IMG/VR virus record: IMGVR_UViG_3300028840_001395
Span: 124,001-188,000 of that record
Reading direction: 5' to 3' (one strand)
Length of the DNA stretch: 64,000 bases
In this document: positions 8,924 through 49,042 of the stretch, piece after piece
Layout: each line of letters opens with the position of its first letter
Numbering within the stretch: position 1 is the stretch's first letter
Notes under the pieces: generated by a model
What the model was told of the DNA's origin: nothing
The model's input: the letters and a program-made list of their open reading frames with translations, nothing else
Databases searched by the model: none
Translations under genes and position numbers: made by a program

Positions 8924-10000
8924 TCACTCGGGCACCTGGGGAAGCTCATCGGTCAGGAAGCCCGCCTTGACCAGTTCCGCTCGCGTCCCCAGCATCGGGA
9001 TGTTCGGGTTCGCCTTGTGTCTCGTCTGCGCCTCGGCCCGGCGGGCAGCCTTGAGGAAGTCCAGCACGAACGCCTTGGGCACCGGCTGCCAGAGGGCGCT
9101 CTTCACCGCGAAGCCTTCGAGGGACTTCCAATCCGGCTCCGTGAAATCGAACAGCACCTTGTCCACCTGGACGAGGCTGCTGTAGCGCACATCGTAGTAG
9201 GGGATCTCCACATCGAGGAACCGGCTCACCCGCTCGATGGTGCCGATACGCATGATGTCGCCCGTGTCCGGGTTGATGCGCCCGTAGGTGAAGGGCATCC
9301 CGAGCCAGTCGAGAAGCTCCTTCTCGTCCGAGTGCCCATCCCCGGTCCCCCACAGGTCGGGCGACGGGGTGGCCTCGATGATGGGCCGGACGACATCGTA
9401 GATGCCCAGCTTGTTGCCCAGGTAGAAGGCAAGCTGGTACACCTCGGTCTTGCTCAGCATGGCGAGCGGATTGGTGTCCACCTCGCCGTCGCCGCCCTTC
9501 TGGTAGAAGCGCAGCCAGCGATCCTCGCACTCGTTGCCGGTCCCGTGCCGGATGCCCCCGCCCATGATGCGGTTGTAGGCACGACCGATGGGTGCCCGCA
9601 GGGTCGAGCGGATGCTTCCGAGGATGGTCGGGTCGGCATCCATGCGTTCCTTGATCTCGGTGCCGATGTCGGTGCCGAAGTGGGCGTCCACGAGCGACGT
9701 GATCACCTCGTCACGGACGTTGTTGAAGATGTCGTTGAAGTGTCCGATGGCCAGAGGCACCTGGAGAGCCTCGCACAGCTCCCGCGCACGGTCGGTCTGC
9801 TGGAAGCTCGTGTGGATGATGGTGTGGTCGAAGATGCAGTTCTCCGGCCCCAGCGCCTTCACGAGCAACATCGTCATCACGGCGGAGTCGATGCCCCCGG
9901 AGATGTCGAGCTGCGCCTTCGGAACCCCGAACTCGTCGTGATACTCACGGATGGACTGCATCCGGTCACGAGCGAGTCCCTTGGCATCAATGACAGGCAT
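8924..10000 (-). CDS. nadE: NH3-dependent NAD+ synthetase (single domain, no glutaminase)
   Basis: ISGGIDSAV ATP-PPase loop, GTGNECED, YQKGGDG, PLAMLSKTEVYQLA, PSPDLW; ATG at 10000 overlaps the pncB stop (TGATG). Confidence 0.9.
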   Translation of the reverse strand: MPVIDAKGLARDRMQSIREYHDEFGVPKAQLDISGGIDSAVMTMLLVKALGPENCIFDHTIIHTSFQQTDRARELCEALQVPLAIGHFNDIFNNVRDEVITSLVDAHFGTDIGTEIKERMDADPTILGSIRSTLRAPIGRAYNRIMGGGIRHGTGNECEDRWLRFYQKGGDGEVDTNPLAMLSKTEVYQLAFYLGNKLGIYDVVRPIIEATPSPDLWGTGDGHSDEKELLDWLGMPFTYGRINPDTGDIMRIGTIERVSRFLDVEIPYYDVRYSSLVQVDKVLFDFTEPDWKSLEGFAVKSALWQPVPKAFVLDFLKAARRAEAQTRHKANPNIPMLGTRAELVKAGFLTDELPQVPE

Positions 10001-11466
10001 CACATACCTCCCCGGACACGCGCCCACTGCTCCTTGATCATGGCCTTCAGCGCCCTCGTGTGTTCCGACACCTCGGGCTTCACGGTGTCCGTGTGGGTCA
10101 GCCGGTGGAAGCCCTTCGGCTCGGACTCCCACTCCTGGCCGACGACGCTGCGCTTGCCATCCTCACTGCGGAAGATCACGGGCTTGCCGGGCAAGGACAT
10201 CTTGCCCTCGACGGCGAACTTCATCACGTCGCGCTCGCCCGTCCGGCACAGCTTGTAGACCGCCGACACGGCGTTCCGGGTGAACTTGTGCGGGGAGGGG
10301 TCGCAGACGAGGAAGCCGCCAGAGCCGTAGCCCGACTGCTCGGGAGTGATGCCCAGCGACTCGCAGAGCACCTCCTGCGCTCGCGCCTTGAGGACGTTGA
10401 TTCCGTCCATGAACATGTAGAAGGGATTGACGTGTTCCTCGGCCTCGGCCTGGACGTACTCGCGGAGCTGAGCCTCCTGGTCGCCCGAGTCGAAGCGGAC
10501 ACCGTGCTGGATGTCCGGGCGTTCCTTCATCGCCTGGACGGCGGCGGGGATGCCGACCTCCATCGCGTCGAAGGTGTCGAACAGGTAGGAGGGCCGCTGC
10601 GGGCGCATGTCCCGGATGGCCCGGAAGGCGTCCAGGTCGTTGCCCCACCGCTGCTGATGCTCGTGGCCCGTGGTGCCGACCGGCACCATCCCCATCTGCT
10701 TCGCGCCCCAGACGTTCGATGTCCGGGTGATGCCCGCCTCCTTGCAGGCGGACAGGGCGATCTCGTGCATCTGGAGGCAGGTCGCGCCTCGCATCCCGAC
10801 CTCGAAGATGCGGTCGCCGCCGACGATGTTGACCAGCCCCTTGGCGTTGTGGAGCACCTTCATGAAGTAGTCGTCCTGCTGGACGGTGATGTCCCGGTCA
10901 TCCTCGCGCTCGATGGCCTCGCAGGTGAGCCGGACGATCTCGGCCTCATCCTCGCAGGTGCAGCGGAACTCACGGGTGTCGTTGGTCAGCACCTCGGTTG
11001 CGATCTGGATGGGGAAGTGCAGGGCGATGGCCAGCGGCTCCAGCCACGACACCAGGAACGAGGGGCCGGTGATGGTGGCGATGGGTTCCCGTGCCATGAC
11101 CCAGGTGCCAGGAGGCGCACAGGTGACCTCGATGTCCTGCTTGAGCGCGACCTCCATCGACTGCGACATGCCGTAGCCGAACATCCGGAGGTAGTCGTTC
11201 TCACCGGGCCAGATCTCGTCCGGCAGCAGCTCGCGGATGAGCAGGTTGAGGTCGAAGGGGATGTAGTGGGTGCCACGTCGGAAGGACAGGTAGAACGTCT
11301 CGCGCCGGAGGGGGAAGCCCGCCTGGGCCATCGAGAACTTGTAGCCGTCCGACATCAGCACGGACGGATCCTTGCCGTTGAGCATCCGCCCGGCGACATC
11401 GAACTCGATGCACTGGTCGGTTCCGACCCTCGCCAGTCTGCTCTGTCTCTTTGCTCTCTCGTTCAC
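10000..11466 (-). CDS. pncB: Nicotinate phosphoribosyltransferase
   Basis: DGYKFSM, EVGMRG, TSNV, GTTGHE, DTFD, GVRFDSGD, VYKL, K..LPGK; adjacent pncA/nadE favour a nicotinate (not nicotinamide) PRTase. Confidence 0.85.
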   Translation of the reverse strand: MNERAKRQSRLARVGTDQCIEFDVAGRMLNGKDPSVLMSDGYKFSMAQAGFPLRRETFYLSFRRGTHYIPFDLNLLIRELLPDEIWPGENDYLRMFGYGMSQSMEVALKQDIEVTCAPPGTWVMAREPIATITGPSFLVSWLEPLAIALHFPIQIATEVLTNDTREFRCTCEDEAEIVRLTCEAIEREDDRDITVQQDDYFMKVLHNAKGLVNIVGGDRIFEVGMRGATCLQMHEIALSACKEAGITRTSNVWGAKQMGMVPVGTTGHEHQQRWGNDLDAFRAIRDMRPQRPSYLFDTFDAMEVGIPAAVQAMKERPDIQHGVRFDSGDQEAQLREYVQAEAEEHVNPFYMFMDGINVLKARAQEVLCESLGITPEQSGYGSGGFLVCDPSPHKFTRNAVSAVYKLCRTGERDVMKFAVEGKMSLPGKPVIFRSEDGKRSVVGQEWESEPKGFHRLTHTDTVKPEVSEHTRALKAMIKEQWARVRGGM

Positions 11467-18789: not shown

Positions 18790-18821
18790 CTAGCCTACTC
18801 TGTCGAGAGCCGAAGTAAGCC
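18790..18821 (-). promoter_or_regulatory. Class I bipartite phage promoter motif (variant GAGTAGGCTAG)
   Basis: GGCTTAC-N14-GAGTAGGCTAG upstream of rIIB. Confidence 0.7.
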
Positions 18822-20943
18822 CCCCGGCATTCTTCTTGGCCTCGCGGGTATCGACCATCTTGATGTACTCGGCCCACTCGTTCGCCTCGACCCAGGTGGG
18901 CTTGTCCGCGTACCGGCTGTCCGGCTCCCACAGGGCCTCGACACTCGCGTGCCGGGTGAACAGCGGGTAGCGATCCCTGATGCGCTTGAGCGCCGGGCCT
19001 GCGGTCGGATGCTTCGGCCCGCCGAACCGCTGGCGCAGAGTACCCATGATATCGCGGATCTTGCGGGGGCACTTGTTCATCGTCTTGATGCCCCGCAGGT
19101 GCCGCTCGAACAGCTTGACGATGGGGTGATCCTCGCCCAGGAGCTTGACCAGGTGCTCCTTGACGGCCTCGGCCTTCGCCGCCTGGGTCTTGCCCTTCCA
19201 GGGGTTGTGGTAGCCGCTCGTCCAGCTCGTCCGGAGCAGGTTCGCCCACTCGTTGTAGGACATGTAGCGCCACAGGAGCGGGGTCATCTTGCCCTCGAAG
19301 AACTTGTCGCGCCACACGCGGTAGTTCATCCCGTCGCAGTCCTTGTCCGTGACCGGCTTCTTGCTGGTGGTCTTGTATCCGTAGACCTCGGGCATCTCCA
19401 GCCCCAGGGCGTCGGCCAGGTACTTGTCCTGCTCGTAGGCCCGGTAGAAGTCCCCGAAGTCCACGGCCTCGAAGCGGCTGATGATGACGAACACGTCATC
19501 GTCCGTGGGCTCCCGATCCACGATCTCCCAGTTCCGCGAGCGGGAGCCGTAGGTCGAGGTGCCCACCAGCCGGAAGCTGCGGACGCGGTGCTTCTTGTTC
19601 GGGGTGCGCCCGTTGTTGGCCTGGACGACCGAGTAGGGCAGCGTCGAGATGTCCACCACCTCGATGCCGACCATCCCGGCCTTCTTGAGCAGCTTGGCCA
19701 GGAAGTCTCGGACGGCCTGCATCGACTCGCCGGGGTTGGGATTGACCACGTAGTCGTACTGGCCCAGGCGGTAGCCCTTGATCTTCTTCTTGTCGTTGCG
19801 GATGACGATCCGGGTGTCGCTGTTGACCATGACCTGCCCGACCGCCGAGCTTCCCCGCAGGATGGTGAACGGAACCTTCGTGCCCTTCTTGATCTTGTCG
19901 TAGAGTCGGACGTTCTCGGCCACCCACTCCTTCGCGGAGTCGGGGAACGGCAGGCCCAGCTTGCCCATCCCGTGCAGGCGCAGGCGCTTGGCCCAGGAGA
20001 GCACCTTGTCGTCCTTGAGCATTTTCAGGGAGTGCTCGACGTACTCCTCGAACAGCTTCTCGAAGCGGGAGAGGAGGATCTCCTTCGTCCGCTTGGAGTA
20101 CTTCAGCTCCTCGCGGCTGGCGCTGATCTCGACCTCCCCGATGTCGAACTTGAGCACTCCGCTCATCCGGTTCAGCGGGAGCCACAGCCCCTCGGCCTCG
20201 TCGCTCCCGCGAAGCTGCTCGATGTTGATGCGGTAGGGGACGCAGCCCATGAGGGCCAGCCACTCGCCGTCATCCTCGTGGACGACACCGCTCGGGAGCA
20301 CCGCCGCCGCCTCCTTCTCGGGGGCCAGCGTGACGTTGATCTCCGGACGCGGGGTGTAGTAGCTGTAGAGGTTGCGGGCCTTGCGCTCGAACTCCCACAG
20401 GTCTTCCGGCCTCACCGCGACCTTGACCTCCACGCCGGTCTCGCTCTCGTCGCAGGGCTCCTCGTGGAGCCGCTGCATGACGCCCAGGTCGGAGTCGTCC
20501 AGCGCCGCCACGTACACCCGCTTCATGCCCCCGTGCCAGGAGGTGATGGTGAAGGTGTCGCTGTAGGCGAACGCCGACTTGGAGCCGATGCCGAGCATCC
20601 CGACCGCCAGGTCGGAGCCCCGCTTGGTGGACTTGCCGTACTGGGTGTAGACCGTGAACACCTCGGCGTCCGAGAGGCCCGGCCCGAAGTCCCGGATGGT
20701 CAGCGTCGGGTCGGCGTTGGTCGGGACGTGGATCTTGAGCGGGGTGTCGCCCCGCCCCGCCTCGCGGTTGGCATCCCAGGCGTTGGCCCCGTACTCGCGC
20801 AAGACCGCGAGCACCCGGTCGGTGTACAGGGTGTCGCGCAGGATGCCCATGATGTGGGCGGTGTCGTCGGCGGAGATGCCGAACGTCGCCTGCTCGCTGA
20901 CGCCGCTGCTCTGCACGTTGCGATCCTTGGAATTGGGAATCAT
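18790..20943 (-). CDS. rIIA: rIIA-like protein (N-terminal GHKL/Hsp90-type ATPase)
   Basis: LREYGANAWDA, IRDFGPGLS, STKRGSDLAVGMLGIGSKSAFAYSDTF; directly upstream of rIIB. Confidence 0.88.
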   Translation of the reverse strand: MIPNSKDRNVQSSGVSEQATFGISADDTAHIMGILRDTLYTDRVLAVLREYGANAWDANREAGRGDTPLKIHVPTNADPTLTIRDFGPGLSDAEVFTVYTQYGKSTKRGSDLAVGMLGIGSKSAFAYSDTFTITSWHGGMKRVYVAALDDSDLGVMQRLHEEPCDESETGVEVKVAVRPEDLWEFERKARNLYSYYTPRPEINVTLAPEKEAAAVLPSGVVHEDDGEWLALMGCVPYRINIEQLRGSDEAEGLWLPLNRMSGVLKFDIGEVEISASREELKYSKRTKEILLSRFEKLFEEYVEHSLKMLKDDKVLSWAKRLRLHGMGKLGLPFPDSAKEWVAENVRLYDKIKKGTKVPFTILRGSSAVGQVMVNSDTRIVIRNDKKKIKGYRLGQYDYVVNPNPGESMQAVRDFLAKLLKKAGMVGIEVVDISTLPYSVVQANNGRTPNKKHRVRSFRLVGTSTYGSRSRNWEIVDREPTDDDVFVIISRFEAVDFGDFYRAYEQDKYLADALGLEMPEVYGYKTTSKKPVTDKDCDGMNYRVWRDKFFEGKMTPLLWRYMSYNEWANLLRTSWTSGYHNPWKGKTQAAKAEAVKEHLVKLLGEDHPIVKLFERHLRGIKTMNKCPRKIRDIMGTLRQRFGGPKHPTAGPALKRIRDRYPLFTRHASVEALWEPDSRYADKPTWVEANEWAEYIKMVDTREAKKNAGGLTSALDRVG

Positions 20944-20962
20944 CGTCGTCTCCCTCTCGGTT

Positions 20963-21166
20963 CTACTTCGGTCCCGTAGACTCGGTGCCCCGGCGCTTCG
21001 ACTTGAACCCCGCGTTCCACAGGGCGTAGCGCCGTGAGCCGTAGGGGTAAGGGTTCATGCAACCCCGCGCCCTCTCGCTTCCCCCGTCCGAGATGCCCAG
21101 GTGAGTCATCTCGGCGGCAGCGGTCTGACCATTCTCGTAGGCCACGTTCCCGCCCGGCCAGTCCAT
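20963..21166 (-). CDS. Small hypothetical protein (67 aa)
   Basis: TGATG coupling to the upstream ORF. Confidence 0.4.
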   Translation of the reverse strand: MDWPGGNVAYENGQTAAAEMTHLGISDGGSERARGCMNPYPYGSRRYALWNAGFKSKRRGTESTGPK

Positions 21167-21303
21167 CACTTGCGCCCCCGGCGCTTGCCCGCGTGGAGCT
21201 TGACGCCGACCGGCCTCACCACCTCGGGCGGGCGGCTCGGGATAGCCCCCGCCGTGAGGGCCACCAGGAACAGGGCCAGGGAGCACAGTGTCATCGTCTT
21301 CAT
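21166..21303 (-). CDS. Small signal-peptide-like protein (45 aa)
   Basis: MKTMTLCSLALFLVALTAGA hydrophobic N-terminus; GGAGG RBS directly after a class I promoter. Confidence 0.5.
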   Translation of the reverse strand: MKTMTLCSLALFLVALTAGAIPSRPPEVVRPVGVKLHAGKRRGRK

Positions 21304-21317
21304 CGCTTCCTCCTGGC

Positions 21318-21349
21318 CCAGACTACTCTCGTCCCTGTCTAAATAAGAC
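21318..21349 (-). promoter_or_regulatory. Class I bipartite phage promoter motif
   Basis: GTCTTAT-N14-GAGTAGTCTGG. Confidence 0.75.
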
Positions 21350-22294
21350 CTACGCCGCGTCGTGTTCGGCGGGGTCAACCTCGGTCTCGACCTCGGCGTC
21401 CGGCACCACCTTGACCTTGGTGAAGTTCGCCGCGTCGCGGGCGAGGCGGGCGGCGGTGAACACCGCGTACTTGTCGCCCTTGAGGATCTTCAGCCAGTGG
21501 CCGATGTACTCCTCGTGCTGGAGCTTGCCCTCGATGGCGTAGTCGGCGCAGAGGAAGGCCGCACCCAACTCCGCGACCAGCTCCTCGGCGGCGTAGCTCG
21601 CGTCCCCGAACCGGCCCTTGAGGTCACGGTCGCAGCGCCCCTCGGCCCCCGTCCAGTGGATGACCTCGTGGAAGGCCGTCGCCAGGTAATCCTCGGGGGT
21701 CTTGAAGGCCTCGACCGGCGGCAGACCGATGCGGTCGCGCTTGGGGTCGTAGAAGGCCTTGGCCCCGCCGTGCTTGATGTCGGCCCCGCAGGTGGCGAGG
21801 AACTCGACCGCCTCGGCGTGGAGGGCCTCCAGGTCCACCGGCTCCGCGTCGGTGAGCTTGGGCTCCTTGTCCGCATCCTCCCACTTGACCTGCTCGTGGT
21901 TGAACACCGTCCAGACCGAGAGGCGCGGCACCTTGCGGTGCTTGCGAGCCTCGAAGTCCTCGTCGGTCTCGTCCTTGCGCTGCTTCGGCACCACGAACCG
22001 CCAGTGGACGATCTTGATGCCGTGCTGGCCCCGCAGGTTCCCGCCCAGCGCCTTGGCCTGGTTGAACGTGTACCAGCGGGGGTCCTGGTATCCAGCGGCC
22101 CAGGCGGCGGCGAACGTCAGCCAGGTGTTGATCCCGTTGTAGACGTGCCCGTTCGCCCCGTTCCGGCTCAGGCCCAGGGTGCGATCCCAGGGGCAGGTCC
22201 ACGGCGCGACTCCCTCTTCGAGAGACGCGATGATGGCGTTGGTGATCTCCGCGTAGTGATCCTTCGGCTTCCAGTTCTTCTTGCCCCGTGCCAT
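21350..22294 (-). CDS. ardC: ArdC-like antirestriction protein (ssDNA-binding domain + zincin metallopeptidase-like domain)
   Basis: LEEGVAPW..PW, YNGIN, WYTFNQAKALGG, FHEVIHWTG...R, YAAEELVAELGAAFLC. Confidence 0.88.
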   Translation of the reverse strand: MARGKKNWKPKDHYAEITNAIIASLEEGVAPWTCPWDRTLGLSRNGANGHVYNGINTWLTFAAAWAAGYQDPRWYTFNQAKALGGNLRGQHGIKIVHWRFVVPKQRKDETDEDFEARKHRKVPRLSVWTVFNHEQVKWEDADKEPKLTDAEPVDLEALHAEAVEFLATCGADIKHGGAKAFYDPKRDRIGLPPVEAFKTPEDYLATAFHEVIHWTGAEGRCDRDLKGRFGDASYAAEELVAELGAAFLCADYAIEGKLQHEEYIGHWLKILKGDKYAVFTAARLARDAANFTKVKVVPDAEVETEVDPAEHDAA

Positions 22295-22320
22295 CGTATC
22301 TCTCCTTTCCCTTGCCTCAC

Positions 22321-22438
22321 CTAGACTACTCTGGCCCAGGGCGAAATAAGACCCCATCTGAAATAAAAAGTACGCGCCCGCGTAGGCGCTTTTTTCGCGC
22401 GAAAGGGTCTTATCTCGGGCCGGGACAGAGTAGTCTAG
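22321..22438. promoter_or_regulatory. Back-to-back divergent class I promoters forming a ~38-bp inverted repeat
   Basis: Minus copy 22321-22352 and plus copy 22407-22438, both GTCTTAT-N14-GAGTAGTCTAG; marks the minus-to-plus gene-orientation switch. Confidence 0.8.
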
Positions 22439-22632
22439 GTGGAACGAGAGGTGCCTCCCGCATCGACCCCCGGCGGGAAGGGAAGGCGCTCCTCCGACGT
22501 AGCTGGGATAGCCTGTATCGCGTCCCGCGTTAGGCTGTCCTGGCAGAAGGCCTGCGGAGGGGAAGGGGGCTAGCATTACACGGGGGCTCACCAAGTCCCC
22601 GATAGCGTAGAAGGGTCAGAACGGAGGAAGCT

Positions 22633-42603: not shown

Positions 42604-43250
42604 GGGTCATCACCCTGGCCAGGAAGCCCTTGGTGGGGTCGGTAGCAGACAACGTGCTCCGGCACTCGACGGGCGGCTTGAACATCGATGCCACCCGCAT
42701 CGGGTATCAGAGCGACGCTGATAAAGCGTCTGCCACGCCGCAAGGATCATGCACGGCGATGAGTGGGCGTCTAGCTGGGAAAGTTCAGGGAGGTGGAGAT
42801 CGGTCGGAGTTCGAGCGGCCCCCCCAGAAGGGCCGTTGGCCCGCCAATGTCATCCTTGAGCACACTTCGGAGTGCCGTCAGGTCGGTACGAAGAAGGTCG
42901 AGGGATGGGACGACATTCGGGGCGGCAATGAAGTCGGGGAGGGTGGCCAGTTCGGGACGGACATCTATGGCGACTCGAAAGGCCGGACAAAGGCTACCCC
43001 CCGAGGCTACGGGGTCGAAGAAGTCCCGGCCTGGGACTGCCACCCCGAGTGCCCCGTCAAGGCCCTGGACGACCAGAGCGGCCCCGATAGAGGGGCCTTC
43101 GCACCCGTCAGGGGGTCAGAGCCGAGCGAAGCCGTCAAGACCGTGTACGGGCAACGTGAGCGCATAGAGGGCGTGTTCCACGGCGACACGGGTGGCGCGA
43201 GTCGGTTCTTCAAGCAGGTCGGAGGTGATGACCGTGCTGATCAGGAATGA
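42600..43250 (+). CDS. Stand-alone internal segment of a phage-type N6A/N4C DNA methyltransferase (no catalytic motifs)
   Basis: ITLARKPL.G.VADNVL.H.TGGLNIDATRI, GRWPANVIL, GGASRFF; no DPPY or FxGxG seen. Confidence 0.65.
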   Translation: MRVITLARKPLVGSVADNVLRHSTGGLNIDATRIGYQSDADKASATPQGSCTAMSGRLAGKVQGGGDRSEFERPPQKGRWPANVILEHTSECRQVGTKKVEGWDDIRGGNEVGEGGQFGTDIYGDSKGRTKATPRGYGVEEVPAWDCHPECPVKALDDQSGPDRGAFAPVRGSEPSEAVKTVYGQRERIEGVFHGDTGGASRFFKQVGGDDRADQE

Positions 43251-43701
43251 CAAGCAACGAGAGAAGTCGGTCAAGCTCCTCGGTGAGATGCAGGCCGAGG
43301 CGAAGGCCTTCAAGAAGAAGCTCCAGAGCGAGGGTCACACTCGGAAGGAGATCAAAGAGCTTCTCGATCCGATGATCAGCCAGTACGAGGATGTTCAGGC
43401 CGACATCGACCAGTACGACCGCTGGAAGGGTGGCGACCTCACTGACTTCGAGGCAGCAGACCTCGACCAACTGGGCATCTTCCTCATCGCTGCCCGAATC
43501 GCCAAGGGCGTGACCCAGCGCGAGTTGGCCGAGAGGTTGGGGGTCAACGAGTCCAGTGTGAGCCGGGACGAGCGCAACGACTACCACGGCATCACCATCC
43601 AGCGGGCCGTCAAGATTCTGGCGGCGCTCGATGTCAGCGTCGTGATCGACATCTGGCCCCAGCGGATTCTGCCACCTCCTGCCGACCACGCCGTGCCGTG
43701 A
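43228..43701 (+). CDS. XRE-family HTH protein (antitoxin-like)
   Basis: LIAARIAKGVTQRELAERLGVNESSVSRDE; GGAGGT RBS. Confidence 0.85.
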   Translation: MTVLIRNDKQREKSVKLLGEMQAEAKAFKKKLQSEGHTRKEIKELLDPMISQYEDVQADIDQYDRWKGGDLTDFEAADLDQLGIFLIAARIAKGVTQRELAERLGVNESSVSRDERNDYHGITIQRAVKILAALDVSVVIDIWPQRILPPPADHAVP

Positions 43702-44048: not shown

Positions 44049-44678
44049 ATGACCACACTCGCGGACTGGACATTCGTCAATAAGACCGCCGCCGCCGATG
44101 TTCCACAGATCAGGCAGTGGGTGGACGAGTGGGAGACCGACGACTATCCCTACGGGCGTTTCCGCACCACAGCCCGCTGGTGGGTAGACAAGAAGGGCAA
44201 CAAGGCCCGCGTAGGCCGCACCACGGTCAACCCCAAGAACGGGCGGGTCAACAAGCCCAAGTACACCACCTACGGGGCTGCAGCGAAGCTGGGCGTGGGT
44301 GCTGACGGTCGGGTGTACATCTTCGTCGGTGGTCCGGGCCAGATCAGGGTCATGGGCGGAGACATGAAGTATAGCCTGGGCAGTGTGTTCACCGATGACC
44401 CTCGGTATGCCGAGTTCGCCAAGCGGCTCAAGATCAAGACCGTGGACAGCCCCAGTGGCGGGACGGCACAGGTCAAGAAGGTCCAGAATGGGGCTCTCAT
44501 TGATGGTCTCCAGGGGACTTCGATGAGACTTCGTGAGCTTCTTGACCTGGCGGGGCTGAAGTCGAGAGATCAGGCGGACATCGACAAGGTCAAGCGGAAG
44601 GACACGATCACACACACCCTCTGGACGGTCATCTTCAAGTCTGACCGCCCCGATTACACCATCCAGGTCAAGACCTAG
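44049..44678 (+). CDS. Basic hypothetical protein with N-terminal LADWTFVNKTA peptide
   Basis: AGGAGG RBS; N-terminus shared with 54864..55190. Confidence 0.7.
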   Translation: MTTLADWTFVNKTAAADVPQIRQWVDEWETDDYPYGRFRTTARWWVDKKGNKARVGRTTVNPKNGRVNKPKYTTYGAAAKLGVGADGRVYIFVGGPGQIRVMGGDMKYSLGSVFTDDPRYAEFAKRLKIKTVDSPSGGTAQVKKVQNGALIDGLQGTSMRLRELLDLAGLKSRDQADIDKVKRKDTITHTLWTVIFKSDRPDYTIQVKT

Positions 44679-45025
44679 TGCAGCGTCAGGCTGTGACCCA
44701 CCACGCGCTTCTCCCCCTGTAGCATCTTCGTCGCCACTTCCAGCGTCGTGATCTCTTCCAGCGTCAGCTCTCGCTCGGGCCGGTAGAGGGCCAGCTCGAT
44801 CTTCTGGGCCACGCTGGGCAGCGCCTCGGGCTGCTCCCGCTGGATGCGGTAGAGGAACTTCTCGGCACAGTCCAGGCAGATGTGGACGACCGTGTTGGGC
44901 GGATGGTCAGCCTCGATGACCCACACGTCATCACCGACCTTGAAGGCCTTGTCGCACTCGTCGCACTCAAGGTCAGGGGGTAGCTCGGGCCACCCCTGCC
45001 ACTCGCCGGGCATATCCAGATTCAC
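44675..45025 (-). CDS. Zinc-binding hypothetical protein
   Basis: CDECD...HICLDC; GTGA overlap. Confidence 0.55.
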   Translation of the reverse strand: MNLDMPGEWQGWPELPPDLECDECDKAFKVGDDVWVIEADHPPNTVVHICLDCAEKFLYRIQREQPEALPSVAQKIELALYRPERELTLEEITTLEVATKMLQGEKRVVGHSLTLH

Positions 45026-45102
45026 TGGCACACCGCCTGAACGACTCCCGTGGCGATCATCACCAGGGCGAATCCGATGGTCAGCACCATGACGGCCTTC
45101 AT
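45022..45102 (-). CDS. 26-aa hydrophobic peptide (absent from ORF track)
   Basis: MKAVMVLTIGFALVMIATGVVQAVCQ; ATGA/GTGA-coupled on both sides. Confidence 0.45.
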   Translation of the reverse strand: MKAVMVLTIGFALVMIATGVVQAVCQ

Positions 45103-45239
45103 CGCACCGGGCTCTCCATGCCCTGTCCCGAGCTATCGACACCCGAAACGCAAGGGCCGACCCAGTTGACGACCGCCGTGGCCACGATGCCCACGATGGC
45201 GACGGTGATGAGAAGCTCGATGAGCGTATATCCCTTCAT
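45099..45239 (-). CDS. 46-aa type IV mini-pilin (prepilin N-methylation motif; absent from ORF track)
   Basis: MKG|YTLIELLITVAIVGIVATAVV with E5; GGGAG RBS; ATGA overlap. Confidence 0.75.
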   Translation of the reverse strand: MKGYTLIELLITVAIVGIVATAVVNWVGPCVSGVDSSGQGMESPVR

Positions 45240-45682
45240 GGATTCTCCCCTGTCAGCTTACGAAGAGTGCTGTAGATGGCGTCCAAGGCCCTCTCACGGG
45301 CCTGCTTGGCAACCTTGTCCTGATCCATGCCCTCACCCACGGTCATCATGGCCCCATGCAGCGTGAGGGCTGTTCCAAGCACCATCAAGGCATCGAAGCG
45401 TGCCAGCTTGAGGATCTTCGCCCGGATTCTCCGGGGGAGCTGGCCGAGATGCTTCTCGGAGCGCTCGACGTATAGCTCAACCTGGTGCCGATCATGTTCG
45501 ATGGCATCCTTGATGAACTGGGGCAACGAGGCTTCCAACTCGCGTTCGCGGCGCTTGACCGCCTCGGCCTCCCTACGAGCCTTGTCAAGTCGCTCTTTTT
45601 CGGCTTTTTCGCGCTGAGCAGATACGATCTGCTCCTCGGTGGCGAGTCCCGATTTCGTCAGAGCGTCTTGAAGTGAGCCCAT
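45236..45682 (-). CDS. Helical hypothetical protein
   Basis: MGSLQDALTKSGL..., charged coiled coil. Confidence 0.6.
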   Translation of the reverse strand: MGSLQDALTKSGLATEEQIVSAQREKAEKERLDKARREAEAVKRRERELEASLPQFIKDAIEHDRHQVELYVERSEKHLGQLPRRIRAKILKLARFDALMVLGTALTLHGAMMTVGEGMDQDKVAKQARERALDAIYSTLRKLTGENP

Positions 45683-45858: not shown

Positions 45859-46538
45859 CGCTTCTCCTGTGCAAGCTCCCATGCCTGCTCTGCGAGCTTC
45901 CGGGCGTCCTCGACCGGCGCTCCCTGCATATAGATACCTGCCTCACCCCGGAGACAGGCGGATTCGTGATGGCTCTGCGCCCAAGCGGCCAGGAAGCTGA
46001 TCACGAACTCCTCCACGAACCGAGCCTTGGACAGAGACTTGCCCTCCATCCACGGGGAGAGCATCCCTGACAAGACTACTCTAGGAAGGGCGTTCAATAA
46101 GCCCTCTACCGTCTGGGTGATTCGCATGGACACCTCGATGAACGTCCTGTTCACGGCGTCCAGGAGGGCCGTGAGCGCCTGATCGACCGTCTTGCGGCCC
46201 TCACACCCCACCGGGAACATCGGTTGCCCCAGAGGCATATCGATCCCCGCTCCCCAGCCGTTCGCCCGCTCGTCGCCCGTGATGGGGCAGAGGTCTGGCT
46301 CCTCATACCAGACGTGGATGACGGCGACCTTGCCCCCGTGGGGGTCGCCCTGGTCGGGCCAGCCGTGGAAGCTCTGGCAGCGAGGCTCTCCGGGGCCGGG
46401 GCCGGTCACACCGGAGTATTTCCACTTCATCGCCATCGGGGTCAGCTTCTGGAGCTTCTCGATGGTTTTCAGGGCGAAGTGGGCGTCCGCCTCGGCCTGG
46501 GCATCTTCCTCGGTTCCAGGGTAGTTTACGGGCATCAT
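45855..46538 (-). CDS. Hypothetical protein
   Basis: GGAGGAG RBS, coupled. Confidence 0.6.
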   Translation of the reverse strand: MMPVNYPGTEEDAQAEADAHFALKTIEKLQKLTPMAMKWKYSGVTGPGPGEPRCQSFHGWPDQGDPHGGKVAVIHVWYEEPDLCPITGDERANGWGAGIDMPLGQPMFPVGCEGRKTVDQALTALLDAVNRTFIEVSMRITQTVEGLLNALPRVVLSGMLSPWMEGKSLSKARFVEEFVISFLAAWAQSHHESACLRGEAGIYMQGAPVEDARKLAEQAWELAQEKR

Positions 46539-47971
46539 CTCCTCCCACTGCCGGGAATACGATGTCTAGGGCACGGAGAAGGATTCTCGGGGTTCTCGCC
46601 TGCTTGGCATTTCCAAGACCATACCCCGCTCTTGGACTTGGACGAAATCCCGTAGTCACACGCCGGACACTGGACACTCTTGCGGGTGCTGCCCTCTGCG
46701 GGCTTGTCCTCGTAGAAGTCACAGTCCTCGTACCCGGTCATGTTCACGTTGATATGGCAGTCACCGTCATCCTTGAGGTGCTTGCACGTCGTACACTTCG
46801 GCCACACTTTCGTTGGTGTCTTCTGCGAGTACAGGTTGCAGATCGGAGCCGTTCCCAACGCCTCGTCCACCTTGCAGGTGCCGGGGCCTCCGTAGTTCTC
46901 ACAGTTCTTGCAGTTGCGCTCCGAGGGACGGGTGGCCCGAAGTCCTGTCCCGCCCGTGGGGGCGATCCCGGCCCACTTGAAGTCCGCGCAACTGACGGGG
47001 TTGCCGATCACCCAGTTCAACCGACATCCGGGGACTTGGGCGTCGAAGTGGACGCACTGGGGGCAACTGGGCTTCGGGCCGGGGCTAGCCTTCTCGGCCT
47101 TGGTCTTGAAGTCTTCACAGTCCCGCGACGGGTAGTGGCCCCGCTGGCACTGCCAGTCCCAGTCGCCGTCCGACGCCTCAACACGGGTGCCATGCTGGCA
47201 GCGGCCACAAGGCACGTTGCGTGTCTCGCCCGTGGCCTGGAGGGGTTTCCAGTCGTTCGCCAGGGTCGGCTGCTTCGCCGCCGCCTTCGGCGGCGGCTTG
47301 GGCAAGTCAGTGGGATGGTCTGGCTGCTGGGCCTTGGGGACGTTGTGGAGGTGGTAGCAGCTACGGGTCTTGTTGGGGTCGCGCTTCTCCTTGCTGCCGC
47401 AGTTGATGAACTCCGCTGCACAGCCCCGACACGGGTCCGCATAGTCGTAGCACCGGACGACATAGCCCTTGGCCAACCACTCGCGGAGCTTGTCCGGCGT
47501 CACGTCGGCGGTCCCACTCTCGTCGGAGAACCGGATGGTGGCGTAGTCCTTGTCCACCGCGAAGAGGCTGCCCGCCCGGATCTCGCACGAGTACACCCCC
47601 CACGAATGGTTGAACGTCTTGACCACCATGTAGCTGTGAGGCAGCGGGAAAATGGCTCGGACAGAGGACAGCCATCCGATGAAATCGTCCTTGAGCGGCT
47701 TGATGACCACCCGCTCAGCCTCTTCCACCGTCCGGGCGAACGGATCCAGTCGGGTCACGATCTGACAGACGGCCCACTCGTTCTGATTCAGGATGATCTC
47801 CAGGCGGAGGGAGCGGTCGAAGTCCGCCTGGAGGATCCAGTGGATACCGTCCGGTGTCTGCCGGACTTCCCAAGCATGGGCGGAAATCTCGGGGAAGATT
47901 TCCCGCGCCAGCCGGACGATGCCGGTGATCGTCATGCCCTGCTGGGCCGCAGCCTGGGGAAGTGCGCTCAC
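46535..47971 (-). CDS. DFxGW-family paralogue with six short C-terminal Cys clusters
   Basis: EIFPE...DDFIGWLSS; repeated CxxC.H/N...C...C. Confidence 0.7.
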   Translation of the reverse strand: MSALPQAAAQQGMTITGIVRLAREIFPEISAHAWEVRQTPDGIHWILQADFDRSLRLEIILNQNEWAVCQIVTRLDPFARTVEEAERVVIKPLKDDFIGWLSSVRAIFPLPHSYMVVKTFNHSWGVYSCEIRAGSLFAVDKDYATIRFSDESGTADVTPDKLREWLAKGYVVRCYDYADPCRGCAAEFINCGSKEKRDPNKTRSCYHLHNVPKAQQPDHPTDLPKPPPKAAAKQPTLANDWKPLQATGETRNVPCGRCQHGTRVEASDGDWDWQCQRGHYPSRDCEDFKTKAEKASPGPKPSCPQCVHFDAQVPGCRLNWVIGNPVSCADFKWAGIAPTGGTGLRATRPSERNCKNCENYGGPGTCKVDEALGTAPICNLYSQKTPTKVWPKCTTCKHLKDDGDCHINVNMTGYEDCDFYEDKPAEGSTRKSVQCPACDYGISSKSKSGVWSWKCQAGENPENPSPCPRHRIPGSGRR

Positions 47972-48414
47972 CCTTCGCCCACCGTGTAGGCGTCACATTC
48001 ACCCGTCCCGCAACAGCCAAGGCACGAGGTTCCGCACACGGGGCATGACCCCTCCCCGTAGCACACGGGGCACGGGTCGCCTTCCTTGAGCGGGCCATCC
48101 GTGAACCAGAAGTCTCGGAGGTCGAGTCGCCACTTGCACCCGAGCTTCTCATCGGCCCGGTTGGCGAAGCAGTCGTAGCACCACACCCCAGCGTCGGAGC
48201 CGATGACCTCATCCCAGAGCTTCGGAGGCACCAGGAAGTCGTGGACGTTGCGGCCACAGTCCCGGCAGCGAGCACACTCCTCGATCAAGGGATACGTCTT
48301 GAGCGTGTGCCGGTTGACCCACTGGGTCAGGTTCCACAGGTGGATACGCCCGATCTTGAGCAGGTAGCCCACCATGTTCCGCCACCCGGTCATCTCTTCG
48401 CGGAGGTCAGTCAT
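47968..48414 (-). CDS. Cys-rich hypothetical protein
   Basis: CRDCG...WCYDCF; CPVC..EG.CPVC. Confidence 0.55.
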   Translation of the reverse strand: MTDLREEMTGWRNMVGYLLKIGRIHLWNLTQWVNRHTLKTYPLIEECARCRDCGRNVHDFLVPPKLWDEVIGSDAGVWCYDCFANRADEKLGCKWRLDLRDFWFTDGPLKEGDPCPVCYGEGSCPVCGTSCLGCCGTGECDAYTVGEG

Positions 48415-49042
48415 TGGGGAATCCACAGGCCGGGCACTTGTCCTGCCAGCTTGCGTTGTAACAGACCTCGCAGTTGGAGCACACGCGGGAGTGCTCGTGG
48501 CTGGCGTGCTCCGGGCAGAACTCGACAATCCGGCCTTCCTTCCAGGTGCAGGCGACACAGGCACAGGCGGAGCAGAACACACCGCCCTGCTCGCCGGGCT
48601 TGGCCCCGCAGATGTGGCAGGGCTTGTCCTCATCGCCCAGCGATTCGAGAAAGCGCATGACCTCCCGGTATCGGGGAGTCTCCTCGCCCCGCCACTTGGG
48701 GAAGTCTCGCAAGGCCCACTGAAGCTGTCGGATGGCCTCGGCCCGGCTCCGGGATAGCTCCAGCATCGCCCGTGGGAGCACGTCGGAGGGCTTGATGGTC
48801 GCCCCTGCCAGGCTGACATCCCGAAGCTCGTGAAGGTGGTCTTGGACGGCCAGACAGAGCCGTAGCACGGTGGTCTTGTACTCGTCGTAGGTGATCATGC
48901 CCATGTTGGCCAGTTCCCAGGCCAAAGCGTGAGCCGTCTCGTGCGGCGAAGAACACCGCTTCTCCAGCCACTTCCGGTCGCCCTCGTTGATGAGGGCGGC
49001 GAGCTTCTCGCGGAGCATCTCATCGGTCAGGGACAGGTTCAT
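48407..49042 (-). CDS. Helical hypothetical protein with C-terminal Cys clusters
   Basis: ATGA overlap, start MNLSLTDE. Confidence 0.6.
   Translation of the reverse strand: MNLSLTDEMLREKLAALINEGDRKWLEKRCSSPHETAHALAWELANMGMITYDEYKTTVLRLCLAVQDHLHELRDVSLAGATIKPSDVLPRAMLELSRSRAEAIRQLQWALRDFPKWRGEETPRYREVMRFLESLGDEDKPCHICGAKPGEQGGVFCSACACVACTWKEGRIVEFCPEHASHEHSRVCSNCEVCYNASWQDKCPACGFPND

What the first reader, a model, noticed from the sequence alone, without database searches (positions are those of the whole stretch)
45022..45239. Unannotated 46-aa type IV mini-pilin coupled to a 26-aa membrane peptide
Seen: MKG|YTLIELLITVAIVGIVATAVVNWVGPC... with a minimal leader, Gly(-1), an aromatic +1 residue, Glu5 and a hydrophobic helix, but almost no globular head. 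It has an RBS and ATGA coupling on both sides, and no other pilus genes are in the window. Established: this motif is processed by PilD-type prepilin peptidases, and T4P are common phage receptors and motility organelles. Inference: a headless pilin could poison pilus/T2SS assembly or titrate PilD, giving superinfection exclusion or altered motility.
Basis: partly seen in the sequence, partly recalled or inferred. Interest (0 to 1): 0.7.

Follow-up and report, generated by a model that had tools for sequence, protein, structure and literature searches.

The report
Headless pilin gene in jumbo phage
A 436-kb phage from sediment metagenomes carries a conserved gene for a 46-residue "pilin" that has the pilin processing signal and membrane helix but no head, always next to a 26-residue membrane peptide; it most likely tampers with the host's pili or related filaments, but this is untested.

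Summary
On the minus strand, 45099..45239 encodes a 46-aa protein with a class III (prepilin) signal: MKG, then Tyr+1, Glu5, a helix at residues 6-30 and a 16-aa tail. It matches Pfam N_methyl at 30.7 bits against a cut-off of 21.2. ATGA overlaps couple it to a 148-aa gene upstream and a 26-aa membrane-peptide gene downstream (45022..45102). That gene overlaps a Zn-ribbon gene by GTGA.

The window lies in a complete 435.8-kb phage genome that has no PilD, PilC or second pilin. The four-gene cassette recurs in five divergent metagenomic loci, and seven 42-46-aa variants exist. Selection falls on the signal motif (pN/pS 0.03) and the C-terminal ESPVR-like end (0.15). The 26-aa frame also evolves as coding sequence. 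Both ORFs are real genes and were already called in public data, so "unannotated" is wrong.

Function is inferred: a pilin processed by the host enzyme that enters or jams the host type IV filament machinery. Truncated PilA genes in Pseudomonas phages have been noted in print but not tested.

One rival has some support. An unrelated mini-pilin family sits directly after endolysin genes in other phages, which hints at a lysis role.

This is a new variant of a known kind, of moderate interest.

The parts
45099..45239 (-). Mini-pilin gene. The prepeptide is 46 aa: leader M-K-G, predicted cleavage before Tyr4 (a 43-aa mature peptide), Glu at mature position 5, a hydrophobic helix, and a roughly 19-aa tail with one Cys and a conserved C-terminal [M/I]-E-S-x-[V/D]-R.
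   Evidence: Pfam N_methyl at 30.7 bits against a cut-off of 21.2. It is the only such match in the phage genome. AlphaFold2 gives a helix at residues 6-30. There are seven variants of 42-46 aa. pN/pS is 0.03 over codons 1-10 and 0.15 over the last 6 codons. GC3 is 0.80 in frame.
45022..45102 (-). 26-aa single-helix membrane peptide gene. Its start overlaps the mini-pilin stop (ATGA).
   Evidence: The peptide is always 26 aa in six loci, with M1, M5, L7, T8, I9, F11, A12, L13, M15 and G19 invariant. pN/pS is 0.38 in this frame against 1.48 and 0.89 in the other two frames. GC3 is 0.88. JGI called it as a gene.
45236..45682 (-). Upstream 148-aa charged, coiled-coil-like protein. Its stop overlaps the mini-pilin start (ATGA). 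The first gene of the conserved cassette.
   Evidence: Seven homologues were found. In all six whose gene tables I looked up, a 42-46-aa ORF follows with a 4-nt overlap. There are only sub-threshold DUF2058-like signals.
44675..45025 (-). Downstream Zn-ribbon-like protein with CxxC...CxxC. It is 116 aa from the GTG that overlaps the 26-aa stop (GTGA), or 112 aa from the ATG at 45013. The last gene of the cassette.
   Evidence: It is syntenic in all related loci. dN/dS against L008 is 0.39. No family was assigned.

Best explanation
The 46-aa gene encodes a phage-made, headless type IV pilin mimic.

Shown:
- It is a real, conserved protein-coding gene in a jumbo phage.
- It carries a full class III signal (basic leader, Gly-1, aromatic +1, Glu5, hydrophobic helix).
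- It has no globular domain.
- It is always co-encoded with a 26-aa membrane peptide.
- The phage brings no prepilin peptidase or assembly genes.

Inferred:
- After infection the peptide inserts N-in into the host inner membrane.
- The host prepilin peptidase cleaves it after Gly3, and probably N-methylates it.
- Its alpha1-N helix then engages the host type IV filament machinery (pilus, competence pseudopilus or type II secretion pseudopilus).
- Because it lacks a head, it either blocks elongation or platform loading, or mimics the inner-membrane pilin pool. An alternative is that it is built into the fibre and changes the fibre surface.
- The benefit to the phage would be loss or alteration of a common phage receptor, so that rival or sister phages do not adsorb to an infected cell.
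- The conserved periplasmic tail and the 26-aa peptide would give specificity or stability. The peptide may act as a small inner-membrane partner, in the way the 30-aa PfsE acts on PilC.
For: - Motif: N_methyl match above the curated cut-off, and unique in the genome.
- Conservation: K-G-[Y/W/F]-T-L-I-E-L-L is invariant in seven variants, while the rest of the helix varies freely.
- Selection: codons 1-10 show 34 synonymous against 4 non-synonymous differences over all pairs (pN/pS 0.03). Codons 11-27 give 0.79. So selection acts on the recognition and assembly motif, not merely on hydrophobicity.
- Length: fixed at 42-46 aa across loci that are about 62% identical in DNA, so this is not a decaying pilin gene.
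- Dependence on the host: no Peptidase_A24, T2SSF or real T2SSE in the phage.
- Precedents: prophage FimU mimics are incorporated into pili and block tip-binding phages. The same paper reports 60-residue truncated PilA in six virulent Pseudomonas phages and proposes incorporation or inhibition (PMC12952977). The 30-aa inner-membrane PfsE blocks pili through PilC (PMC8764522). Pilin levels in the inner membrane are read by PilS through direct contact (PMC6058289). Viral pilins are assembled by host machinery in Natrinema (PMC12426801).
- Phage catalogues: several PHROG families with 51-72-position profiles match the same motif.
Against: - There is no expression, processing or phenotype evidence. 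Only DNA runs hold the sequence.
- The host is unknown, so it is not shown that it has type IV filaments.
- Neighbouring genes give no functional hint.
- Small pilins can form normal filaments, so 'headless' does not imply 'inhibitor'.
- Another mini-pilin family is coupled to endolysin genes, and one locus has a lipoprotein gene inserted after the mini-pilin. Both point toward envelope or lysis functions.
- The complex prediction for mini-pilin plus 26-aa peptide gave no verdict.
Confidence: 0.45

Rival explanations
1. Lysis or envelope-disruption accessory. The mini-pilin and the 26-aa peptide are small membrane peptides that act at the end of infection. They could be holin-, antiholin- or spanin-like, or a short pseudopilus that pushes on the envelope. 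The pilin-type N-terminus would be used for membrane targeting or polymerisation.
For: - An unrelated family of 44-50-aa N_methyl peptides (P0017, P0103) is encoded directly after a Hydrolase_2 endolysin gene with a 4-nt overlap. It lies before a conserved membrane protein (phrog_2087 in L091; a 363-aa gene at the same position in L112/L113, not scanned) in low-GC phage contigs L091-L093 and L112-L113.
- In L094 a third mini-pilin follows a 151-aa protein with an HExxH motif and precedes a membrane protein.
- In L090 a 97-aa lipoprotein gene (lipobox L-A-S-C) lies between the mini-pilin and the 26-aa peptide, the position an o-spanin would take.
- Paired, overlapping small membrane-peptide genes are typical of lysis cassettes (general knowledge).
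Against: - No endolysin, holin or spanin family matches any scanned gene of the surrounding block, about 36.3-52.2 kb of the window.
- No SLT or phage lysozyme domain was found anywhere in the genome.
- A 16-19-aa periplasmic tail cannot span the periplasm as an i-spanin does.
- A holin would not need an invariant Gly-1/Glu5 prepilin motif under pN/pS 0.03.
- Genes that exclude other phages are also often placed beside lysis genes, so adjacency in other phages is ambiguous.
Confidence: 0.2
2. A constructive viral pilin. The host machinery polymerises the mini-pilin into its own thin filament, or builds it in as a regular subunit. This would give the infected cell adhesion, aggregation or a new surface, rather than inhibiting pili.
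For: - Natrinema provirus SNJ2 encodes pilins that the host machinery assembles into the dominant surface filaments (PMC12426801).
- Phage FimU is incorporated without loss of pilus function (PMC12952977).
- The best PDB matches are the short Geobacter PilA-N.
- The invariant Glu5 is the residue used for subunit-subunit contacts in filaments (established knowledge of type IV pilins).
Against: - The mature peptide is shorter than any solved type IVa-class pilin.
- The tail is predicted disordered.
- A virulent-type jumbo phage has little time to profit from new filaments.
- No partner 'head' gene comparable to Geobacter PilA-C is conserved. Only L090 has an extra periplasmic protein.
Confidence: 0.15
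3. Generic small membrane peptides (for example toxin-like or membrane-remodelling) whose likeness to prepilins is only convergent. A weaker version is that the ORFs are not translated.
For: The peptides are very short. There is a weak, non-significant Ldr_toxin hit (E 0.53). No experimental data exist.
Against: - The motif match is above the curated cut-off and has strong motif-specific purifying selection.
- Frame-specific constraint and in-frame GC3 hold for both ORFs.
- Length and overlapping starts and stops are conserved in six loci.
Confidence: 0.05

Closest known systems
Truncated PilA-like proteins (N-terminal ~60 residues) of six virulent Pseudomonas phages, and phage P-FimU / P-PilA (Sztanko et al. 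2026, PMC12952977)
   Same: These are phage-encoded copies of type IV pilus subunits without phage-encoded machinery. The truncated ones keep only the N-terminal helix, and the proposed roles are incorporation or inhibition to block pilus-dependent phages.
   Different: The window's protein is shorter (46 aa pre, 43 aa mature). It forms its own family of seven clusters with a conserved Cys-containing tail ending in ESPVR-like residues. It is always coupled to a 26-aa membrane peptide and sits in a 436-kb uncultured phage. Homology to the Pseudomonas-phage group could not be tested because no sequences were available. P-FimU proteins are full-size minor pilins.
Type IVa major pilins and type II secretion pseudopilins (Pfam N_methyl, PF07963)
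   Same: The class III signal is shared: Gly-1, aromatic +1, Glu5 and a hydrophobic alpha1-N helix. PDB pilins align over the first ~20 mature residues.
   Different: There is no globular alpha-beta domain and no disulfide-bounded D-region. Pro22 is absent. The leader is unusually short at 3 residues.
Geobacter PilA-N ('geopilin domain 1', PDB 2m7g, 7tgg, 9egp)
   Same: It is the best-scoring solved structure (E 2.4e-7) and a naturally short pilin that is little more than the N-terminal helix.
   Different: The likeness is confined to about 20 residues. PilA-N is 61 aa mature and pairs with a separately encoded head-like PilA-C (from memory). Here the conserved neighbour is a 26-aa membrane peptide.
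PfsE of Pf filamentous phages (PMC8764522)
   Same: It is a functional analogue for the 26-aa peptide: a ~30-aa phage inner-membrane peptide, N-terminus in the cytoplasm, that shuts down type IV pili by binding PilC.
   Different: There is no sequence likeness. The YxWGW motif that defines PfsE is absent from the 26-aa peptide.
Flp/Tad (type IVc) pilins
   Same: The mature size is similar (~40-50 aa), and they are single-helix subunits that still form filaments (from memory).
   Different: The Flp motif (Gly then xxxxEY) is absent: the window has E-L at mature positions 5-6. The Pfam scan at E up to 1 returned N_methyl and no Flp family.

Membership tests
Type IV pilin / prepilin-type class III signal (Pfam PF07963 N_methyl) | Profile match above the curated cut-off | tested here: met
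   30.7 bits against 21.2, E 2.1e-7; 31.1 bits in the six-frame genome scan.
Type IV pilin / prepilin-type class III signal (Pfam PF07963 N_methyl) | Short basic leader ending in Gly-1, hydrophobic or aromatic +1 residue, and Glu at mature position 5 | tested here: met
   M-K-G then Y-T-L-I-E. K2, G3 and E8 are invariant and +1 is Y, W or F in seven variants. pN/pS is 0.03 over codons 1-10.
Type IV pilin / prepilin-type class III signal (Pfam PF07963 N_methyl) | A hydrophobic alpha1-N helix of about 20 residues or more | tested here: met
   AlphaFold2 helix at residues 6-30, with pLDDT 82-91 over residues 1-20.
Type IV pilin / prepilin-type class III signal (Pfam PF07963 N_methyl) | C-terminal globular alpha-beta domain | tested here: not met
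   Only about 16-19 residues follow the helix, and they are predicted unstructured. All variants are 42-46 aa.
Type IV pilin / prepilin-type class III signal (Pfam PF07963 N_methyl) | Cleavage and N-methylation by a PilD-type prepilin peptidase, and assembly by a type IV filament machine | not testable with these tools
   The phage encodes no Peptidase_A24, T2SSF or T2SSE above cut-off. The host is unknown.
Flp/Tad pilins | Gly-xxxxEY processing motif and an Flp profile match | tested here: not met
   Mature positions 5-6 are E-L. There is no Flp family among the Pfam hits at E up to 1.
PfsE-type pilus-inhibiting peptides (for the 26-aa ORF) | Conserved aromatic YxWGW cluster in a ~30-aa inner-membrane peptide | tested here: not met
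   The alignment of six 26-aa peptides has a single conserved aromatic residue (F11) and no such motif. The motif is taken from PMC8764522.
Phage lysis cassette (holin / endolysin / spanin) | Adjacency to an endolysin gene, or a match to holin or spanin families | tested here: not met
   No lysis family matches the cassette or the scanned neighbouring genes. No SLT or phage lysozyme domain is in the genome. Other endolysin families were not searched genome-wide.
Truncated phage PilA group of Pseudomonas phages (PMC12952977) | Sequence homology to that group beyond the shared N-terminal motif | not tested
   The paper's sequences and Table S3 are not held. tblastn of the 46-aa protein against 50,697 phage records found nothing, probably because of the low-complexity filter.

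The most novel reading that the evidence does not exclude
The mini-pilin and the 26-aa peptide form a two-part device carried by a phage that has no filament machinery of its own. After host PilD processing it would be polymerised by the host type IV machine into a headless pseudopilus that the phage uses for its own ends. It could plug the secretin or platform as an irreversible cap, or serve as an envelope-breaching piston linked to lysis. Three observations fit this reading: unrelated mini-pilin families sit directly behind endolysin genes in other phages; one relative carries a lipoprotein inserted in the cassette; and cysteines in the pilin tail and the peptide C-terminus appear to trade places between lineages.
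Probability: 0.1. Interest if true: 0.85.

Novelty: new variant of a known kind. Interest (0 to 1): 0.5.

Why it matters
Type IV pili are among the commonest phage receptors, and phages are known to disarm or remodel them with dedicated proteins (Tip, Aqs1, PfsE, P-FimU). A 43-residue peptide that keeps only the part of a pilin seen by the peptidase, the platform and neighbouring subunits would be the smallest natural probe of that machinery. It could also give a broad-spectrum way to switch off pili, competence or type II secretion.

The data here also show that 40-55-residue 'N_methyl-only' proteins are abundant in metagenomes and recur in phages in at least two fixed gene contexts. This points to an unstudied class of phage peptides. 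The finding turns a passing remark in the literature about truncated phage PilA into a defined, conserved cassette with testable residues: Gly-1, Glu5, the tail Cys and the ESPVR end.

Tried and rejected
- Complex prediction. The mini-pilin (A4) plus 26-aa peptide (A5) scored 0.04 against a mark of 0.32, with no verdict. It counts neither for nor against binding.
- Expression.
- Host or relatives. The 227-aa and 148-aa neighbours found no other IMG/VR relatives. The C-terminal motif pattern found no other IMG/VR contig either, and the mini-pilin alignment found only two generic N-terminal pilin matches there, L004 and L005. A degenerate DNA pattern for the 26-aa peptide gave only chance hits in GTDB genomes and IMG/VR. 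The closest isolates by RIIA are only about 30% identical and come from mixed hosts. The window has no tRNAs.
- tblastn of the 46-aa protein against 50,697 phage records found no match, probably because of low-complexity masking.
- Neighbour function. Pfam, PHROGs and the ESM Atlas gave nothing above threshold for the 148-aa, Zn-ribbon, 66-aa, 227-aa and 478-aa proteins.
- Kilmury and Burrows 2016 is not held, so the PilA-PilS point is cited through PMC6058289.
- The promoter and terminator scan found no sigma-70-like promoter, and no terminator on the minus strand, between 43.5 and 53 kb. The cassette therefore looks like the distal end of a long leftward operon, but the scan is weak evidence.
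- Rejected: a decayed pilin pseudogene (fixed length and a conserved C-terminus in seven variants), and a chance ORF (frame-specific selection).

Full report
**Where the window lies.** The window is bases 124,001-188,000 of a 435,804-bp IMG/VR virus record with direct terminal repeats, rated complete. G+C is about 62%. It is an uncultured jumbo phage. Recognisable genes in the window include an RIIA-like protein, an anti-restriction protein, an NAD synthetase-like protein and a nicotinamide phosphoribosyltransferase-like protein. The nearest isolated phages by RIIA are only about 30% identical and infect unrelated hosts. The host is therefore unknown. Public runs that hold the sequence are DNA runs from sediment and seawater metagenomes; none is RNA.

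**The observation.** On the minus strand four ORFs are chained by overlapping stops and starts:
- a 148-aa ORF (45236..45682)
- the 46-aa ORF (45099..45239), joined to the first by ATGA
- a 26-aa ORF (45022..45102), joined by ATGA
- a Zn-ribbon-like ORF (44675..45025, from a GTG that overlaps the 26-aa stop as GTGA; an ATG lies 12 nt further on, at 45013)

Purine-rich ribosome-binding sequences precede both small ORFs.

The 46-aa product starts M-K-G, then Y-T-L-I-E-L-L. It matches Pfam N_methyl at 30.7 bits against a gathering cut-off of 21.2 (E 2.1e-7). This is the only N_methyl match in the whole phage genome. AlphaFold2 on the family alignment gives one helix at residues 6-30 followed by a low-confidence tail.

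**Are the small ORFs real genes?** The identical 46-aa protein is a called gene on 11 public contigs, nine of them 0.2-1 Mb, and JGI also called the 26-aa ORF. Those copies are identical in DNA and say nothing about selection. Divergent relatives are informative.
- A metagenome scan found L008.
- A profile of the 148-aa neighbour found six further homologues. In all five whose gene tables I looked up, a 42-46-aa ORF follows with a 4-nt overlap, then a stretch that encodes a 26-aa peptide, then the Zn-ribbon gene.
- L090 has a 97-aa lipoprotein gene inserted after the mini-pilin. The 26-aa peptide follows it, starting at a GTG that overlaps the lipoprotein's stop.
- In all there are seven 90%-identity clusters of the mini-pilin, each 42-46 aa.
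- An exhaustive profile search of 1.84 billion representatives finds three clusters of this family (E below 1e-20). Scores then drop sharply to generic N-terminal pilin matches at E 3e-9 and weaker.

*Selection on the small ORFs.*

| Comparison | Region | Ratio |
|---|---|---|
| Window vs L008 (about 62% DNA identity) | mini-pilin | dN/dS 0.44 |
| Window vs L008 | 26-aa ORF | dN/dS 0.13 |
| Window vs L008 | flanking genes | dN/dS 0.39-0.56 |
| All pairs of five DNA orthologues | mini-pilin codons 1-10 (34 synonymous, 4 non-synonymous differences) | pN/pS 0.03 |
| All pairs of five DNA orthologues | mini-pilin codons 11-27 | pN/pS 0.79 |
| All pairs of five DNA orthologues | mini-pilin last six codons | pN/pS 0.15 |
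| All pairs of six DNA orthologues | 26-aa ORF, its own frame | pN/pS 0.38 |
| All pairs of six DNA orthologues | 26-aa region, the other two frames | pN/pS 1.48 and 0.89 |

In-frame GC3 is 0.80 for the mini-pilin and 0.88 for the 26-aa ORF, as in the genome's other genes. The pairs are not phylogenetically independent and synonymous sites are near saturation, so these values are rough. The pattern is still clear. Both ORFs encode proteins. In the mini-pilin, constraint falls on the prepilin motif and on the C-terminal [M/I]-E-S-x-[V/D]-R, not on general hydrophobicity.

**What the anatomy implies.** Gly-1, an aromatic +1 residue and Glu5 are the determinants read by PilD-type prepilin peptidases and used in subunit packing. 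This is established knowledge of type IV pilins; the Pfam model encodes the same motif. The phage has no Peptidase_A24, no T2SSF platform protein and only sub-threshold P-loop hits to T2SSE. Any processing or assembly must therefore use host proteins. The mature peptide would be about 43 residues: a membrane helix plus a periplasmic tail of 16-19 residues with at least one Cys in every variant. It is neither a decayed pilin, because its length and C-terminus are conserved, nor a full pilin, because the globular domain is missing.

**Best explanation.** I take it to be a phage pilin mimic that the host peptidase processes in the inner membrane and that then engages the host type IV filament system. 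The most likely effect is interference: blocking the platform or elongation, or mimicking the inner-membrane pilin pool. The alternative is incorporation that changes the fibre. The benefit would be exclusion of pilus-dependent competitors, or of sister phages. Precedents:
- Prophage FimU mimics are incorporated into pili and block tip-binding phages. The same paper notes 60-residue truncated PilA in six virulent Pseudomonas phages and proposes incorporation or inhibition, without a test (PMC12952977).
- The 30-aa inner-membrane PfsE stops pili by binding PilC (PMC8764522).
- PilS senses pilin in the membrane by direct contact (PMC6058289).
- Viral pilins in Natrinema are assembled by host machinery (PMC12426801).

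PHROGs already holds several families with 51-72-position profiles that match this motif, all of unknown function, and one family annotated as pilin. My confidence in this functional reading is about 0.45. My confidence that the two ORFs are real genes with a selected prepilin signal is about 0.9.

**Rivals.** The strongest rival is a lysis or envelope role.
- Among other short N_methyl proteins, one unrelated family (P0017, P0103; 44-50 aa) is encoded directly after a Hydrolase_2 endolysin gene with a 4-nt overlap. It lies before a conserved membrane protein of about 360 aa (phrog_2087 in L091) in low-GC phage contigs.
- Another (P0025) sits between an HExxH protein and a membrane protein.
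- Together with the lipoprotein insertion in L090, this hints at envelope functions.

Against this rival for the window's family:
- No lysis family matches any scanned gene between about 36 and 52 kb.
- The genome has no SLT or phage-lysozyme domain.
- The periplasmic tail is too short for a spanin.
- A holin would not need an invariant prepilin motif.

A second rival is that the peptide is a constructive subunit of a filament. The best PDB matches are the short Geobacter PilA-N proteins, though only over about 20 residues. Chance or convergence is unlikely.

**The 26-aa peptide.** It is always 26 residues, with ten invariant positions in six loci. It has no PfsE motif. Its role is unknown. 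A complex prediction with the mini-pilin gave no verdict. One pattern is worth noting. Lineages in which the peptide ends A-V-C-Q have one Cys in the pilin tail. The L008/L086 lineage, whose peptide ends V-A-F-P, has two Cys in the pilin tail. L090 has one Cys plus the Cys-rich lipoprotein. This could reflect an intermolecular disulfide, but there are too few lineages to test it.

**Comparison and novelty.** Membership in the prepilin-signal family is met on motif, profile and helix. It is not met on the globular domain and is untestable on processing. The protein is not an Flp pilin, the peptide is not PfsE, and the cassette is not recognisably a lysis cassette. Phage-encoded pilus components and truncated phage PilA are already described, so the kind is known. 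New here are:
- a distinct 42-46-aa family with a conserved tail
- an obligate 26-aa partner gene inside a four-gene overlapping cassette
- occurrence in a 436-kb phage
- direct evidence that selection targets the processing and assembly motif

The ESM Atlas shows that clusters of 45-54-aa N_methyl-only proteins with 50-70 members are common in metagenomes. The class is therefore broad and unstudied.

**Verdict.** It is a new variant of a known kind, with interest about 0.5.

Noticed in passing
L091:737-1386, L112:5516-6153 and L113:5450-6087 (other phage contigs): A different family of 44-50-aa N_methyl mini-pilins (P0017, P0103; C-terminus C-E-K-P-H) is encoded immediately after a Hydrolase_2 endolysin gene with a 4-nt overlap. 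It lies before a membrane protein of about 360 aa (phrog_2087 in L091), in low-GC phage contigs.
   Followed up: partly
L090:3599-3892: One relative of the cassette has a 97-aa Cys-rich lipoprotein gene (lipobox L-A-S-C) inserted between the mini-pilin and the 26-aa peptide. Overlapping starts and stops are kept on both sides. It has no Pfam or PHROG match.
   Followed up: partly
window 45022-45239 and the orthologues in L008, L086, L087, L088 and L090: Cysteines appear to trade places between the two peptides. The pattern is one Cys in the pilin tail plus a peptide ending A-V-C-Q in three lineages, and two Cys in the tail plus a Cys-free peptide in another. A periplasmic disulfide link is possible, but there are too few lineages to test it.
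   Followed up: no
window 8924-11466 (minus strand): Adjacent NAD synthetase-like and nicotinamide phosphoribosyltransferase-like genes form an NAD+ salvage pair, of the sort reported for jumbo phages.
   Followed up: no
window 18790-22594 (minus strand): An RIIA-like gene (phrog_612, E 1e-98) lies next to an anti-restriction protein gene (phrog_7245, E 5e-75).
   Followed up: no
window 46535-49042 (minus strand): Three consecutive ORFan genes in the same leftward operon are rich in CxxC pairs (478, 148 and 211 aa by the public gene calls). The Zn-ribbon gene of the cassette makes a fourth Cys-rich gene in this operon. The three scanned ORFs (478, 283 and 322 aa) have no family match.
   Followed up: no
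ESM Atlas and the representative library: Many complete-looking 39-70-aa proteins consist only of a prepilin signal, a helix and a short, often Cys-containing tail. Atlas clusters of 45-54 aa have 50-70 members each, with taxa not recorded.
   Followed up: partly
window 43192-43701 (plus strand): A 169-aa HTH_3 (Cro/CI-type) regulator lies in the plus-strand gene block that converges on the cassette's 3' end. The HTH gene is conserved at this position in the longer relatives L003, L088 and L089.
   Followed up: no
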